Positions 23,681 to 34,106 of a stretch of 64,000 nucleotides of DNA are shown in pieces. Location: IMG/VR virus record IMGVR_UViG_3300030294_000005, positions 1-64,000 of that record; one strand, 5' to 3'. How positions within the stretch are numbered: position 1 is the stretch's first letter; every line of letters starts with the position of its first letter. Under the pieces are notes generated by a model. It was not told the origin of the DNA, ran no database searches, and worked only from the letters and a program-made list of their open reading frames with translations. The translations under genes and the position numbers were made by a program.

Positions 23681-24607
23681 ATGAAAATTATTAAGTTTGT
23701 AGAAAGGGAATTCGTTACTGTAGATGATTGGGTTCCTGAGCCAGAGGATAAGATTTTTAGACACACTAAAGATTTTGTTATTTTACCAGTATCTAAGTAT
23801 TATAATATAGATAATGATGCATTAGATTATTTTAATATTTCTAAGAAAAGATGTTATAATGAGTATAAGATGAGAGAGCATATAACCCATTATATAAATT
23901 ATTTTCTAAAATTTTATGATACTCAACAAGAACTATTCTATATATATTCTAATTTAAAGTATTTAATAAGTTTAGATGAGTATGATAAGAAAGCATTCTT
24001 TTATGATTTAGACAAATATGTATTCTCATTGTCTATGAAAATAAAGATAAATCAAATGAATAGAGATAATTATTCTCTATCTCTTAAATATAAAAATAAG
24101 AAAGATCCATGTCTACAGTATACAAACAAACATGGATATATAATGATGGAAATGAGTTTGATGATGAATTTAATAATTCCATTGCTTACTCATTTTATAT
24201 ATACTAAAAAAATTAATGATTCTAATAAATTTTTATTAGAAGCGTTTGATTTAATTATAAGCAAATTTGGAATGGACTTATACAGTAAACTATATGAAAC
24301 ATCACTTACTAATATAAATAAGAATAAAGATAAAAATCCAATATGGAATAAACAAGATATCAGAGGTATAAATACAACCACACATGCAATTGATTCTGTA
24401 GAAAATATTATTTTACAAATAATGCCAAAATATGAATATTGCCAAAATATAATAGTATTTAATTATCAGGCAATAAAAAATAATATAGGATATAGAGTTA
24501 CTACAAGTGGTTATGAATTTACATTTATTCCATTGTCATCATCTAAGAGGGATGAGGATATGAATAGTGAATTTGATAAATTTGAATCCTATTTAACTAA
24601 GGCGGAT
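23681..24607 (+). CDS. Exon 1 of probable non-virion RNAP promoter-specificity (sigma-like, AR9 gp226/phiKZ gp68-type) subunit
   Basis: Splicing 24607^25197 gives ...YLTKAD|ESLYLQNK..., 495 aa; size and position two genes from the chaperonin match AR9 (gp226/gp228). Confidence 0.6.
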
Positions 24608-25196
24608 TTTAAGTAGTCCCATTAATGTAGTAACACATTAATGAAAACTCTTTGAATTGCTGGAATACTCTAATAGCTTAATTAACTACAACGTGATCTG
24701 TAAAGATGAGCGTGAATGTGATCGAAAGATAGAAAAAATAATTAAGATGAGGTATGATGATAGTAAATCTAACCCTTGATAACAATGAGTAACCGTAGCA
24801 GCGAAGTATATTTAATAATACATCCATATAGTAAATTTAATATCTAAAAGGAATAAAAATATGATAGCAATAAAAAATAGAGCTAGATTTACTGCTATAT
24901 CTAAAGATTATAATTTTTAATATTATTAAATATAAACGTTCAACGACTATCGAAAACTAATATACTAGTAAAGTCTAGTTAAAAATAAGGTATAGAAATA
25001 TACACGAAGTGAGTAGAGTACAGCCCAAGTGGGTAGATGCATTTTAGCCAATATAAGACATCTTTAAATGGAAGTGAAGAGTATCCTACTTATATATTAA
25101 ATATAAGGGATAATGATATAGTCTAGTCTTCTAGGGAAATCCTAGAGAAGTTCATAAGAGAACTGCATTAGAGTTGCGATCTAGTGTGAATATTCG
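24608..25196 (+). ncRNA. Group I intron, 589 nt, no endonuclease ORF
   Basis: 5' U.G P1 (GGAT/GTCC); P GAATTGCTGGAA 24654; Q TAGCAGCGAAG 24796; R GTTCAACGACTA 24938; S GATATAGTCT 25115; terminal G 25196 restores the frame. Confidence 0.9.
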
Positions 25197-25757
25197 GAAA
25201 GTCTGTATTTACAAAATAAAGTAAATTGTCAAGAAACAATGAATAAGATAACTAATCATTTTGGCCCATTTGATCAAAAAGAAATAGATTTCTATATGGG
25301 ACAATTAACACAAGATGGAAAAACAATAATAAATGATTTCCAAAAGAATTTAATATTTAATCTATTCTATAAATATTTTGGAGACTCTGTTAGTATAAAA
25401 GCTATTAATAAAGAAGACTATGTTAAATTAATGATAACAGCTAAAAGAATTTTATCATCTAATAATATGGTAATATTACCCTATATAGTCAGCGGTAGAG
25501 TTAATAGACTTCCACAAAGAAAAAATATAAATAAAAAAGAATTAAATAAAATACAGAGTTCGCCATATTTTGATTACATTACTAAGAAATATAACAATCC
25601 TAAGATAGAGAAGTATATATTCTCTGTGATAGCAACGATATTGGTATCTGATTTTCAAATAATTGATTATTATGATAAAGAACTTAATGGTAAGCATATA
25701 GAAATGATACCAGATATAGTATGTGAAGAAATTCTTATGTATATAATGAGTATATAG
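25197..25757 (+). CDS. Exon 2 of the sigma-like RNAP subunit
   Basis: In frame from GAA 25197 through ATG 25239 to stop. Confidence 0.8.
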   Translation, partial: ESLYLQNKVNCQETMNKITNHFGPFDQKEIDFYMGQLTQDGKTIINDFQKNLIFNLFYKYFGDSVSIKAINKEDYVKLMITAKRILSSNNMVILPYIVSGRVNRLPQRKNINKKELNKIQSSPYFDYITKKYNNPKIEKYIFSVIATILVSDFQIIDYYDKELNGKHIEMIPDIVCEEILMYIMSI

Positions 25758-31133: not shown

Positions 31134-31331
31134 TTAAAAAATTGGATCTGACACTTTTGTTTCAGGTAGAATTAATGTAAGATTATATAATGATTGAATA
31201 GCTTCATTTGATGATGTTCTTATATTTAACCCACCTAAAGATATATAATGAGATTTAGCCTGCATATGCTCTTCTAATTCTTGATTAGCTTCTATTGTAT
31301 ATGCTGCTTTTACTGTAACCTGATCTCCATC
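31134..31331 (-). CDS. rpoC: Exon 2 (65 aa) of the virion RNAP beta'-N subunit (missed by the ORF track)
   Basis: DGDQVTVKAAYTIEANQEL...SDPIF*; completes the catalytic GGDY|DGD motif. Confidence 0.85.
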   Translation of the reverse strand, partial: DGDQVTVKAAYTIEANQELEEHMQAKSHYISLGGLNIRTSSNEAIQSLYNLTLILPETKVSDPIF

Positions 31332-32621
31332 TATTTAACGCCCTTATTCTGGATGCTGAGCACTTATATTTTTATATAAGATTGGACTATATTATACCTT
31401 TCGGCCCGCCTCTTTCGATTTAAAGGATTTAATACCTACCACAAAGTGGCCCTACTCTACTCACTTCAGAAGTGTATCCACCTCTTAATTTTAACTAGAA
31501 GTATTACTAGTATATCAGCTTTCGATAGTCTCTGAACCTTCTACCAATTATAATCTTTAGATATATCGAGATAAGCATCTCTTCGTCGTATTCGTCCTAT
31601 GAATCCACGACATTGTTCATAAGTTCCAGGTAAATTTAATTCACGTATTATCTCACCAGTTCTTTTACCATCTTGCAATAATTTACATACTCCAATAATA
31701 TATTCATCATAATTCATAAACTTTTTAGCAGAAGGGATATTATATAAGCATGATATTGATTGCCACCTTAAACCTTGAGCTATATGACTTACAATAAATC
31801 TATTATTTTCATTAACCTCTAATCCAGCTATTTCAAGTGTATTTCCATAATTAAATCCATCTTCTAATGCTTTGCATATAAAATGAATTTGTTTATTTGT
31901 TAATCTTGACATACCATTATCTTCACCAGCAGTAATTTCACCATGGCTCCAATTATGATTATTTATATATGGAGTGCTATAATCTATTTCTCTTGCTCCA
32001 TTTTCTATGGCATGATCTACATTTTCTTGTGGTGTAATCCATTCAAGATTTTCAATTCTATTATTGAATTTACATAGATCCTTATGATTAACAAATATTT
32101 TATTTTCTGGATCTGAATTTATTATAAACATTATTGCAACTAATACATGAATTCTATATGTAGATCTTGTATTATTATTGTTCATTAATTGTGTTGATAA
32201 ATAAGTATCTACAATAGTTGATAATAGTTTACCTGATTTCTTATTCATAATTTTACCGAAATTACTTATTTGATATAAATCATGTTTTATATTTAAACAT
32301 TCTAAATCTACCCAAATAACTTCATTTTCAAATGTTATCGGTCTATACATAATTAATCACCTCTTAATGTATAGTTACTTGATCGGTAGACTAGTATTAT
32401 AATTGATAGCTTGGCTGCTGATTATCCATTGTTTATAAGGGTTAGGAATGTTTCACCATACCTCATCTTAATTATTTTTCTTATCTTTCGATTACATTCA
32501 CGCCTATCCATTACAGATTACGTTGTAGTATAATTAAGTTTTAGAGTATTCCAGCAGTTTAAGCGGTTTTTGTTTTAGGGAATTTCGCCCAAGGTAGACT
32601 ACAATGTATAAGATTAGGTTC
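31332..32621 (-). ncRNA. Group I intron (1290 nt) in the RNAP catalytic motif, carrying an HNH gene
   Basis: P1 GACTAT/GTAGTC with U.G; P AACTGCTGGAA 32559-32549; Q AATCAGCAGCCAAG 32423-32410; R GTTCAGAGACTA 31537-31526; S AATATAGTCC 31393-31384. Confidence 0.9.
31541..32350 (-). CDS. Intron-encoded NUMOD4-HNH homing endonuclease (I-HmuI-like)
   Basis: YQISNFGKI, IHVLVA..F and VNHKD..K.NN...NLEW.T..EN..HA; lies between intron Q and R elements. Confidence 0.9.
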   Translation of the reverse strand: MYRPITFENEVIWVDLECLNIKHDLYQISNFGKIMNKKSGKLLSTIVDTYLSTQLMNNNNTRSTYRIHVLVAIMFIINSDPENKIFVNHKDLCKFNNRIENLEWITPQENVDHAIENGAREIDYSTPYINNHNWSHGEITAGEDNGMSRLTNKQIHFICKALEDGFNYGNTLEIAGLEVNENNRFIVSHIAQGLRWQSISCLYNIPSAKKFMNYDEYIIGVCKLLQDGKRTGEIIRELNLPGTYEQCRGFIGRIRRRDAYLDISKDYNW

Positions 32622-34106
32622 ATAGTCTCCACCTATAGCAGTAAGATATAGATTACATATATTCAATGTATCTATAAATTTATTACTTGTATCCTTTTCT
32701 ATATCTTCTTTTCTTATCTTAGGATAATACTTATAAAACTTATTATCATACCACATAGGTTCTATATCTTTCGTAGAAGATACAACTATTTTTGAAGGAT
32801 ATTGATTAAAATAACTATCCATAGGATATCTTGTTATTAATATTTTTTTATCACTTGAGCATTCAATACAAGCCATATATATTAAATCACACCAAGTTAG
32901 ATTTCTTCCTATTAATGGAGTTTTTAATATTTCTTCATTTGTAGCATCATCAATATCTAAATTTCTTCCTTTAAAATTCATATGAATAGTTTTCTTTTCA
33001 TCATTAGGAACTTCTATAGCAATAAATCTATTTGAATATCCATGTATAAATCTATCAAGTTCTTTCTTTATTCTAATATCAGAGAATTCTATTAATGGAT
33101 CTTTTACTTTTATATATTTTACTTCAGTACTATCCTTTTCTATATAAGGATACATTCCATTTCCAGAGAATTCATTTTCAAAGAATCTTCTTATCCAAAA
33201 TTCTACATAAGGATATAAATTTGTACATAATGATGATAGTGGAACTGCAGTATGATCTAGATCTACCATCAAGTCCTCTAATCTTTCTACTCTTAAATTT
33301 GGAGCAGATAAAACTAATCTTGAAGAATAATCGGCAGTCTTAGACATTACTGATCTTTTTATTATACCTTTTTTTCCATATATATTTGGTTCTTGTGATA
33401 ACCAAGCATATATTGCTAATAATATTTCTTGAACTCTTCCTTTAGAAGCAGTTGACATTGTTAAACCATAATCAGCAGTTTCTTTTAAAGATCTAACCGC
33501 TATTATTAGATTATCATATAACTTATTAATTTCTCCTACTCCTATTACAGTTGCTTCAGTATTTACATCTCTATAATATGCTGGTATTACTATACATTTC
33601 TTTACAAATAATTTATCTTTATTATTTTTTATGAATTGTATTTTAGTGTCTCTTTTATCTGAATCAGTAGTTCCTATTTTAATGATATCAATATTATCTT
33701 TTAAGAACTTAATACCATTTTTTCCATTCTCTTCATCTTCTACAAAATCACCTTTTGAATTTATAGAATACTTTTTTGTACCATGAACAATCTCTCTAAC
33801 TCTTTTATCCATTTGACACCATAATTTATATACTAATGGATGTAGAAAGTATTCGGTGAGGTCTATATATGCATATTTATTAGCTCTCTCATCTGTTGAT
33901 ATACCGAATATAGTATTAGATAGGAGTCCCCTTTCTGTTGGTACACCCTTTCTTACAAAATACACAGGATCAGTCACTTCTTCTATATCATTTGCTTTAA
34001 CAAATATATCTGGTTCCAATATTTCTAATTTAAAATGTTCTTCTATTGCACTTTCTAATGCAGTTTGTAATATATTAAACTTAAAATCATCTTTCAATTT
34101 TCTCAT
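32622..34106 (-). CDS. rpoC: Exon 1 of virion RNA polymerase beta' N-terminal subunit (phiKZ gp180-type); 560 aa when spliced
   Basis: GLLSNTIFG, AYIDL, VIPAYYRD, MSKTADYSSRLVLSAP and LITRYP beta' motifs, with DYDGD near the C-terminus as in phiKZ-like vRNAP. Confidence 0.85.

What the first reader, a model, noticed from the sequence alone, without database searches (positions are those of the whole stretch)
31326..32627. Non-canonical splice junction: intron must end in omega-A, or be cut after G instead of U
Seen: exon 1 reads GGA GAC TAT|G AACC... and the 3' end reads ...GCGTTAAATA|GAT GGA GAT CAG. Canonical splicing (after U, after G31331) gives DY-MEIRLQ* and destroys the catalytic DYDGD; the upstream G puts TAA in frame. 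The frame is restored only by a 5' cut after U32622 with terminal A31332, or a 5' cut after G32621 with terminal G31331 (same mRNA). P1 (GACTAT/GTAGTC) and P10 (exon GATG with intron CATT abutting the U.G pair) favour omega-A, while P7 looks canonical. Known: group I introns almost always end in omega-G bound at the P7 G-site; exceptions are rare. The gene is essential, so the intron should splice.
Basis: partly seen in the sequence, partly recalled or inferred. Interest (0 to 1): 0.68.

Follow-up and report, generated by a model that had tools for sequence, protein, structure and literature searches.

The report
Phage self-splicing intron ending in A
A self-splicing intron that splits the catalytic motif of a giant phage's RNA polymerase gene ends in A instead of the almost universal G; the same oddity recurs in related phages, so it looks like a real, working exception, not a sequencing error.

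Summary
On the minus strand, a 1290-nt group I intron (32621..31332) carrying an HNH homing-endonuclease ORF sits between the Tyr and Asp codons of the DYDGD catalytic motif of a jumbo-phage virion RNA polymerase beta' gene. Only three junctions restore DYDGD: U/A, G/G and A/A (nucleotide before the 5' cut / last intron nucleotide). None is canonical. The sequence is identical in three assemblies, so a random error is unlikely. I read both junctions of 20 homologous introns at the same site. Fifteen end in G. Five lineages, including the window, end in A. In the other four the intron starts with A, so U-1 with a terminal A is the only junction that gives the motif. P1, P10 and P9.0 all place A31332 at the omega position. 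The guanosine-binding pair in P7 is unchanged in both classes. A tree of the intron cores requires at least two omega changes. The exons flanking one omega-A intron are under purifying selection. A +1-shifted pathway cannot be excluded for the window alone. There is a precedent: one Coxiella 23S rRNA intron lacks omega-G. So this is a new, recurrent instance of a rare known exception. No transcript evidence was available.

The parts
32622..34106 (-). Exon 1 of the virion-type RNA polymerase beta' (N-terminal half) gene, 495 codons, ending ...GGDY
   Evidence: ORF. tblastn gives 28-35% identity to beta' subunits of jumbo phages LPJP1, BpSp, AR9/PBS1 and Staphylococcus jumbo phages. Metagenomic relatives reach 78% identity.
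31332..32621 (-). Group I intron, 1290 nt, phage IA2-like, with extra hairpins between P7 and P3'
   Evidence: Boundaries follow from the DYDGD constraint. The core helices were mapped by hand. The core is similar to other phage group I introns, one of them annotated as such. Homologous same-site introns hit Rfam Intron_gpI (L040 49.2 bits, L227 38 bits).
31134..31331 (-). Exon 2 (DGDQVTVKAAYTIEANQEL...PIF, 65 codons plus stop)
   Evidence: Translation; aligns with the C-terminal ends of intron-less homologues.
32622..32628 (-). P1 exon strand AGACUAU; U32622 is the -1 nucleotide of the 5' splice site
   Evidence: Seven pairs, with U32622.G32602 as the terminal wobble. The U.G is invariant in 11 of 11 aligned relatives. 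P1 has compensatory changes (L404 GAUUAU/GUAAUC and L381 GACUUU/GGAGUC).
32596..32606 (-). Internal guide sequence: CAUU (32606-32603, P10 strand), then GUAGUCU (32602-32596, P1 strand)
   Evidence: P10 = exon-2 GAUG (31331-31328) with CAUU, abutting the U.G pair. P10 covaries in L344 (GACGG with CCGUU).
31541..32350 (-). Homing-endonuclease ORF, 269 aa, in the P6a loop, preceded by a GAGGTG ribosome-binding site. Its last codons form the 3' strand of P6a.
   Evidence: Pfam HNH_3 at 26.2 bits (cut-off 24.8); NUMOD4 at 19.6 bits, below its cut-off. The 14-bp P6a helix is 32409-32396 with 31554-31541.
32552..32566 (-). 5' strands of P3 (CCGCUU, 32566-32561) and P4 (CUGCUG, 32557-32552)
   Evidence: They pair with AGGCGG (31411-31406) and CAGCAG (32420-32415). 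P3 shows many compensatory changes among relatives.
31525..31532 (-). P7 5' strand GAGACUAU, with a bulged A and the G of the guanosine-binding G-C pair
   Evidence: Pairs with AUAGUCC at 31390-31384. The same element occurs in the omega-G relative L039.
31384..31411 (-). P3 3' strand (31411-31406), P8 hairpin GCC-GAAA-GGU (31405-31396), J8/7, and P7 3' strand AUAGUCC (31390-31384)
31363..31383 (-). J7/9 (AAU, 31383-31381) and the P9 hairpin (31380-31363). A31382 and U31381 can pair with U31333 and A31334 to form P9.0.
   Evidence: An analogous 2-bp P9.0 just before the terminal nucleotide can be drawn in L039, L175, L227, L344 and L381 (read).
31332..31332 (-). Omega position: A, where 15 homologous introns have G
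32621..32621 (-). First intron nucleotide, G. Because it equals the first exon-2 nucleotide (G31331), the junction is formally ambiguous.
   Evidence: G at this position also occurs in the omega-G relatives L038, L039 and L040.

Best explanation
A mobile group I intron of the phage IA2-like type, carrying an HNH homing endonuclease in P6a, sits between the Tyr and Asp codons of the DYDGD metal-binding motif of the virion RNA polymerase beta' gene. Proposed pathway (inferred): exogenous guanosine, bound at an unaltered G-C site in P7, attacks after U32622, which forms the U.G wobble that closes P1. The freed 5' exon then attacks the bond between A31332 and G31331. That bond is positioned by P10 (GAUG with CAUU, stacked directly on P1) and by a 2-bp P9.0. 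The intron therefore ends in A (omega-A), and the mRNA reads GAC UAU GAU GGA GAU. Shown here: the sequence, its reproducibility, the core helices, and the comparative pattern. In this same-site intron family omega is G in 15 lineages and A in 5, with no change in the guanosine-binding pair. The second splicing step in this family therefore appears to tolerate A. Not shown: the chemistry and its efficiency.
For: 1. Only U/A, G/G or A/A junctions restore DYDGD in the window.
2. Four other same-site intron lineages end in A and start with A, so U-1 with omega-A is their only solution.
3. One of these lineages is seen in four or more contigs from different samples, with and without the endonuclease ORF. 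Its flanking exons, including the downstream one, give dN/dS of about 0.15 between the two variants. So the downstream exon is read in frame.
4. P1 with the invariant U.G pair, and P10 abutting it, are supported by compensatory changes. P9.0 fits the A.
5. The window's A31332 is identical in three assemblies.
6. Each of the three covarying P7 classes (GAG/CC, CAG/CG, AACG/CU) contains both omega-A and omega-G introns. The core tree requires at least 2 omega changes and 4 on the best tree. So the A is a recurrent, tolerated state.
7. G as the first intron nucleotide is not associated with omega-A (1 of 5 against 3 of 14). The shifted route is therefore not what permits the A.
8. Precedent: a Coxiella 23S rRNA group I intron 'lacks the canonical omegaG' (title cited).
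Against: There is no transcript or biochemical evidence. No spliced-length protein identical to the window's phage or to L236 exists in the protein collection. The guanosine-binding G-C pair is canonical. From my own knowledge of the model introns (Tetrahymena G414 mutants; Michel 1989; Been and Perrotta 1991), an omega-A is poorly ligated unless that pair becomes A-U. G31331 lies next door and could compete as omega, which would give a frameshifted mRNA. P10 is no longer in omega-A introns (4-6 pairs) than in omega-G introns (3-9 pairs), so no compensating feature was identified. The three assemblies of the window's phage are nearly clonal (0-1 differences), so they rule out random error but are not independent lineages. 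L344, L227 and L381 each rest on one contig at the 3' junction.
Confidence: 0.7

Rival explanations
1. Both splice sites are shifted by one nucleotide. Guanosine attacks after G32621, which can form a G.U pair with U32603 and so extend P1. G31331 then serves as a normal omega-G. The mRNA is the same as under omega-A, and the intron is 32620..31331.
For: It is formally one of the three solutions. It keeps a G in the guanosine site. P1 can extend by G32621.U32603 and A32620-U32604.
Against: The cleavage-site pair would be a reversed G.U instead of the U.G that is invariant in all 11 aligned relatives. The four other omega-A lineages cannot use this route yet keep the A. The omega-G relatives L038, L039 and L040 also start with G and use U|G. 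P10 would lose its first pair, and P9.0 would not fit.
Confidence: 0.15
2. The ribozyme mostly splices canonically (after U32622, with G31331 as omega) and makes a frameshifted, truncated product (DY-MEIRLQ*). Only a small fraction of transcripts is joined correctly. The A is then a mildly deleterious or expression-limiting mutation, not a well-tolerated state.
For: G31331 is adjacent to the omega position and P7 is canonical. From my own knowledge, model introns choose nearby G residues when omega is mutated. The virion polymerase is needed in few copies.
Against: The A has persisted in at least two clades and in diverged variants under purifying selection. P10 and P9.0 disfavour the shifted 3' site. 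This reading differs from the main explanation only in efficiency, which cannot be computed.
Confidence: 0.1
3. Artefact or dead gene. A31332 is an assembly or sequencing error, or the intron no longer splices and the gene is a pseudogene.
For: The window's relatives mostly have G at this position (15 of 20 lineages).
Against: The base is identical in two IMG/VR contigs from different samples and in one ENA assembly. Four other lineages have the same feature. Both exons are intact and conserved. The exons flanking the L175/L236 omega-A intron show dN/dS of about 0.15.
Confidence: 0.04

Closest known systems
Coxiella burnetii 23S rRNA group I intron Cbu.L1917 (Raghavan et al. 2007, J Bacteriol 189:6572)
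   Same: A natural group I intron that lacks the canonical omega-G (title as cited). From my memory of the abstract, the terminal nucleotide is A and the intron still self-splices in vitro and in vivo.
   Different: It is a subgroup IB2 intron in a bacterial rRNA gene (for the subgroup), known as a single lineage. [quoted passage not shown] The G/A switch recurs among homologous introns at one site. The full text was not held, so details of the precedent are unverified here.
Bacillus phage AR9 g145 (virion RNAP beta' N-half), second intron
   Same: The same gene in a related jumbo phage. It is a group I intron with a homing endonuclease inside the same catalytic loop.
   Different: It is inserted 3 nt downstream (DYD|GD) and is canonical: GAU| at the 5' site and ...UUUUG| at the 3' site.
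The second intron in this window (24608..25196, + strand)
   Same: A paralogous ribozyme in the same genome. It shares about 80% identity over 181 nt of the 5' core and 70% over 131 nt of the 3' core, with the same R and S elements.
   Different: Its junction, fixed by intron-less homologues (...YLTKQDESLYLQ...), is canonical: GAU| ... UUCG|GAA. It holds only a remnant of the endonuclease ORF.
Phage IA2 introns such as T4 td and nrdB, Twort orf142 and SPO1 DNA polymerase; also the PhiPA3 gp210 intron described
   Same: Self-splicing introns in essential phage genes, with a homing endonuclease in a peripheral loop, inserted at highly conserved codons (my own knowledge; PMC11620839 abstract).
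   Different: To my knowledge all of these end in G.
Engineered Tetrahymena ribozymes with P7 G264-C311 changed to A-U (Michel et al. 1989; Been and Perrotta 1991)
   Same: Splicing that uses an adenine-type nucleotide at the guanosine site or at omega (recalled from memory).
   Different: There the binding pair had to be changed. Here the G-C pair is unchanged in omega-A and omega-G introns alike.

Membership tests
Group I intron (Rfam RF00028) | P1 helix in which the last exon nucleotide, U, forms a U.G wobble with the internal guide sequence | tested here: met
   AGACUAU with GUAGUCU; U32622.G32602. The U.G is invariant and P1 has compensatory changes among 11 relatives.
Group I intron (Rfam RF00028) | Conserved core P3-P8, including P4/P6 and P3/P8, and P7 with a bulged nucleotide next to the guanosine-binding G-C pair | tested here: met
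   All helices were located by hand and are complementary. In relatives, 20 of 32 predicted pairs show compensatory changes. The P7 closing pair covaries (G-C, C-G, A-U).
Group I intron (Rfam RF00028) | Significant match to the family covariance model | tested here: inconclusive
   The window gives no hit, as expected with an 810-nt ORF inside P6a. Homologous ORF-less same-site introns score 49.2 bits (L040, E 7e-10; gathering score 50) and 38 bits (L227, an omega-A intron, E 2e-6).
Group I intron (Rfam RF00028) | The last intron nucleotide is G (omega-G) | tested here: not met
   A31332. Fifteen same-site homologues have G and four other lineages have A.
Group I intron (Rfam RF00028) | Guanosine-initiated self-splicing | not testable with these tools
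   Needs in vitro transcription and splicing, or RNA data.
Subgroup IA2-like phage introns | Extra hairpins (P7.1, P7.2) between P7 and the 3' strand of P3; ORF in a peripheral loop | tested here: inconclusive
   Hairpins at 31511-31494 and 31474-31462 and the conserved GAGUAGAGUA block lie between P7 and P3'. They were assigned by eye, not by a subgroup model.
HNH homing endonuclease | HNH domain above the curated threshold; location inside a mobile intron | tested here: met
   Pfam HNH_3 at 26.2 bits against a cut-off of 24.8. NUMOD4 at 19.6 bits is below its cut-off of 23.4. Cleavage activity was not tested.
Multisubunit RNA polymerase beta' (jumbo-phage virion enzyme, N-terminal half) | Homology to beta' and the D-x-D-G-D metal-binding motif | tested here: met
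   tblastn hits to annotated beta' subunits of AR9, PBS1, LPJP1 and others. The motif is restored only after splicing. Pfam gave no hit on the separate exons.
Natural group I introns without omega-G (Coxiella Cbu.L1917 type) | A non-G terminal nucleotide together with demonstrated splicing | tested here: inconclusive
   The terminal A is shown by sequence and by comparative constraint. Splicing is inferred from conservation and purifying selection, not observed.

The most novel reading that the evidence does not exclude
In this lineage of phage group I introns the second splicing step has an intrinsically relaxed requirement for the terminal nucleotide: G or A, with no C or U seen in 20 lineages. 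The first step still uses an ordinary guanosine pocket. Either the A is accommodated in an unchanged G-C site, or the 3' splice site is chosen by P10 and P9.0 alone. Natural near-isogenic pairs (window and L039; L175/L227 and L059/L090/L428; L344/L381 and L346) would then make the long-studied question of omega recognition directly testable with natural sequences.
Probability: 0.5. Interest if true: 0.7.

Novelty: new member of a known kind. Interest (0 to 1): 0.58.

Why it matters
The terminal G of group I introns is treated as universal, both in textbooks and in annotation rules. One intron-mapping pipeline, for example, scores candidate junctions by U-1 and omega-G. Here the reading frame of an essential catalytic motif fixes the junction, and a quarter of the homologous same-site introns end in A. 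That gives three things:

- A second natural case, and to my knowledge the first in a phage or a protein-coding gene, of a ribozyme that does without omega-G.
- A set of natural G/A pairs with the same core, which could be used to ask how the guanosine site or P10/P9.0 selects the 3' splice site.
- A practical warning. Gene callers and intron mappers that insist on a terminal G will report the RNA polymerase beta' genes of these jumbo phages as frameshifted or broken.

Tried and rejected
**Rfam on the window.** The intron region at a permissive threshold and the whole window at the gathering threshold gave nothing. The ORF splits the core, so I relied on ORF-less homologues instead.

**Sequencing error.** Rejected after finding identical sequence in L004 and L158.

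**Other junctions.**
- A cut after U32624 with G31331 as omega uses canonical nucleotides and is in frame. It gives DYGD, losing a catalytic Asp, and U32624 is Watson-Crick paired in P1.
- Upstream G residues put TAA in frame or insert residues into the motif.
- A separate start for exon 2 is unlikely: the ATG at 31330 is out of frame, and the first in-frame Met lies 22 codons into the exon.

**Direct evidence of spliced mRNA.** I looked in the protein collection for a full-length protein identical to the exons of the window's phage or of L236. None was found; the best full-length hits are 78% and 74% identical.

**A feature that compensates for omega-A.** P7 class, P10 length and first intron nucleotide show no association with omega-A.

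**Sampling limits.**
- The wide pattern scans were mostly chance matches. Only about 10% of loci were relevant.
- The alignment-based scan was biased towards intron-less alleles, because one of its patterns was GGDYDGD.
- L429 and L430 end before the 3' junction.

**Literature.** The full text of Raghavan et al. 2007 and related Coxiella papers is not held. Only the title could be verified. Searches for other natural omega-A introns found none, but most older literature is not in the library.

**Not used.** No complex prediction, structure prediction or representative-protein search was needed.
Full report
**What is there**

The feature lies on the minus strand of a 25% G+C window. The window is identical to IMG/VR contig 3300030294_000005, which is 236 kb. 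An ORF at 34106..32559 encodes the N-terminal half of a multisubunit RNA polymerase beta' subunit. It is 28-35% identical to the virion or beta' subunits of jumbo phages LPJP1, BpSp, AR9/PBS1 and Staphylococcus jumbo phages, and up to 78% identical to metagenomic proteins.

The ORF leaves the conserved sequence after ...LTAIGGDY and runs 20 junk codons into an intron. The remainder (DGDQVTVKAAYTIEANQEL...) resumes at 31331. Intron-less homologues read G[AG]D[YF]DGD without interruption. The spliced mRNA must therefore read GAC UAU GAU GGA GAU.

**Checking the observation**

Joining U32622 to A31330, with G31331 as omega, gives DY-MEIRLQ*.

I enumerated all cut pairs around both junctions. Exactly three restore the motif:

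| 5' cut after | Last intron nucleotide |
|---|---|
| U32622 | A31332 |
| G32621 | G31331 |
| A32620 | A31330 |

The in-frame combinations with canonical nucleotides (U and G) give DYGD or insert residues, which destroys the three-Asp metal site.

The 1601 nt around the intron are identical in a second IMG/VR contig from another sample. An ENA assembly is 100% identical over 6008 nt, including the 3' junction. Two further ENA contigs cover the 5' junction with one mismatch each elsewhere. A random sequencing or assembly error is therefore very unlikely.

**Is it a group I intron?**

Rfam finds nothing in the window. The likely reason is that an 810-nt ORF splits the core. That ORF matches Pfam HNH_3 above its cut-off and NUMOD4 below its cut-off.

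The elements can be placed by hand and are complementary:
- P1: AGACUAU with GUAGUCU, with U32622.G32602 as the closing wobble.
- P3, P4 and P6.
- A 14-bp P6a whose 3' strand is the end of the endonuclease ORF.
- P7 with a bulged A and a G-C pair at the guanosine site.
- P8 and P9.
- P10: exon-2 GAUG with CAUU, directly abutting P1.
- A possible 2-bp P9.0: A31382-U31381 with A31334-U31333.

The 5' core is 72-80% identical to other phage introns, one of them annotated as a group I intron. The P7 element is shared with 30 IMG/VR loci. ORF-less homologues at the same site match Rfam Intron_gpI: L040 scores 49.2 bits and L227 scores 38 bits. An alignment of 11 such introns recovers P1, P3, P5, P6 and P6a, with compensatory changes in 20 of 32 pairs and an invariant U.G at the 5' splice site.

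**The decisive comparison**

About a quarter of the 120 closest proteins stop just after GDY, which means they carry an intron at the same place. I fetched contigs by exact-protein look-up and by pattern scans. This let me read both junctions of 20 distinct same-site introns.

- **Fifteen end in G directly before GAYGGNGAY:** L038, L039, L040, L043, L059, L090, L157, L286, L307, L337, L343, L345, L346, L404 and L428.
- **Five lineages end in A:** the window; L175/L236/L308/L334 (...ACUACCA|GAUGGC); L227 (...AAAUCA|GAUGGA); L344 (...UAAACA|GACGGU); and L381 (...UCCGAA|GAUGGG).

In the four non-window cases the intron begins with A. The enumeration then finds a single solution: U-1 and a terminal A.

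P1 and P10 covary with the exons in these introns. Examples are L381 GACUUU/GGAGUC, L404 GAUUAU/GUAAUC, and L344 GACGG/CCGUU. The guide sequence therefore points at the same junction. A 2-bp P9.0 can be drawn immediately before the terminal nucleotide in all five omega-A introns (sequences).

**Is the A functional?**

The L175-type intron occurs in at least four contigs from different samples. It appears as a 388-nt ORF-less form and as a 1107-nt form with an endonuclease gene, and both have the same 3' end. Between those two variants the flanking exons, including the one downstream of the intron, differ at 9 synonymous and 5 non-synonymous codons out of 134. This gives dN/dS of about 0.15. 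The counts are small, but they are what an in-frame, translated exon 2 would show.

A maximum-likelihood tree of the intron cores puts L175 and L227 in one well-supported clade. The window, L344 and L381 fall in the other half, among omega-G introns. The well-supported branches force at least two changes of omega state, and the best tree needs four.

The three covarying P7 classes (GAG/CC, CAG/CG, AACG/CU) each contain both states. The guanosine-binding G-C pair is unchanged throughout. No feature I examined tracks the A:
- P10 is 4-6 pairs in omega-A introns and 3-9 pairs in omega-G introns.
- The first intron nucleotide is G in 1 of 5 omega-A introns and in 3 of 14 omega-G introns.

**Interpretation for the window**

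The window's intron is the only omega-A member that also starts with G. It alone therefore has the formal alternative of shifting both cuts by one nucleotide. Several points favour omega-A:
- The relatives cannot use the shifted route, yet they keep the A.
- The omega-G relatives L038, L039 and L040 also start with G and cut after the U.
- The U.G wobble is invariant.
- P10 and P9.0 fit A31332.

I put omega-A at about 0.7. The shifted route, alone or as a side path, is at about 0.15. Predominant mis-splicing to G31331 with only a minor correct product is at about 0.1. An artefact or dead gene is at about 0.04.

How an A is handled by an unchanged guanosine pocket is not explained. By my recollection, work on model introns (Tetrahymena G414 mutants, and the G264-C311 to A-U switch) found that omega-A is a poor substrate unless the pocket is changed.

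**Controls in the same genome and gene**

A second, paralogous intron lies at 24608..25196 on the plus strand. It shares about 80% identity over 181 nt of the 5' core and about 70% over 131 nt of the 3' core. Intron-less homologues fix its junction as ...GCG GAU| ... UUCG|GAA AGU, which is canonical.

In Bacillus phage AR9 the homologous gene (g145) carries an intron 3 nt downstream (DYD|GD), with canonical U and G.

**Comparison with what is known**

Reviews and an intron-mapping pipeline treat omega-G as a defining feature, while natural C at -1 is acknowledged. One natural exception is on record: Raghavan et al. 2007, whose title states that one of the two Coxiella burnetii 23S rRNA introns 'lacks the canonical omegaG'. 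From memory, that intron ends in A and still self-splices. The full text was not available to me.

The present case is therefore a new member of a rare known exception. It differs in several respects: subgroup (IA2-like, not IB2), host gene (a protein-coding gene whose frame fixes the junction), host (jumbo phages), and recurrence within one homologous family. My searches found no other report of this, but the library lacks most older subscription literature.

**Limits**

Everything about the chemistry is inferred. There are no RNA data. Three of the omega-A lineages (L227, L344, L381) rest on a single contig at the 3' junction. The assemblies of the window's phage are nearly clonal.

Noticed in passing
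window 24608..25196 (+ strand): A second group I intron of the same structural family, 589 nt. It interrupts an unannotated gene (exons 23681..24607 and 25197..25757). Intron-less homologues read ...FESYLTKQDESLYLQNKVNCQETM..., which fixes a canonical junction (GAU| ... UUCG|). It holds only a short ORF (MIAIKNRARFTAISKDYNF) whose end resembles the C-terminus of the endonuclease in the other intron, so it looks like a decayed homing-endonuclease gene. Rfam did not report it at the gathering threshold.
   Followed up: partly
L404:5960-6490 (IMGVR_UViG_3300032167_000242): In a relative, the two codons GAT TAT (Asp-Tyr of the motif) form a 6-nt micro-exon between two group I introns. One intron is inserted after GG and ends ...AAUACG. 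The other is the same-site intron and ends ...AUUUAG.
   Followed up: partly
relatives of the gene: P0017, P0022, P0044, P0124, P0127; L415:5383-5470; L175:6027-6397; L002/L427 (AR9): The catalytic loop is a hot spot for introns. Besides DY|DGD, relatives are interrupted after GG, after DYD (AR9), after DYDG, and about 65 codons upstream (after TRYP..., also the first AR9 intron). L175 carries two introns where L236 has one. The upstream L175 intron scores 77 bits on Rfam Intron_gpI and ends in G.
   Followed up: partly
window 31541..31554 and 32396..32409: The last 14 nt of the endonuclease ORF, stop codon included (GAUUAUAAUUGGUAG region), form the 3' strand of a 14-bp P6a helix with the sequence just after P6. 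Translation of the ORF's end and folding of the ribozyme should therefore compete.
   Followed up: no
L175:6965-6982: The last 18 nt of the L175-type intron read GDYILP in frame with exon 2 and resemble the end of exon 1. This is probably a by-product of the P9 stem being similar to the guide sequence. ACUAC in this stretch could also pair with the guide sequence.
   Followed up: no
window 32562..32621: Exon 1's reading frame continues 20 codons into the intron (EPNLIHCSLPWAKFPKTKTA), across P1, P2 and the 5' strand of P3. The recurring 'HCSL' in the read-through tails of relatives is simply the translated guide sequence CAUUGUAGUCU.
   Followed up: yes
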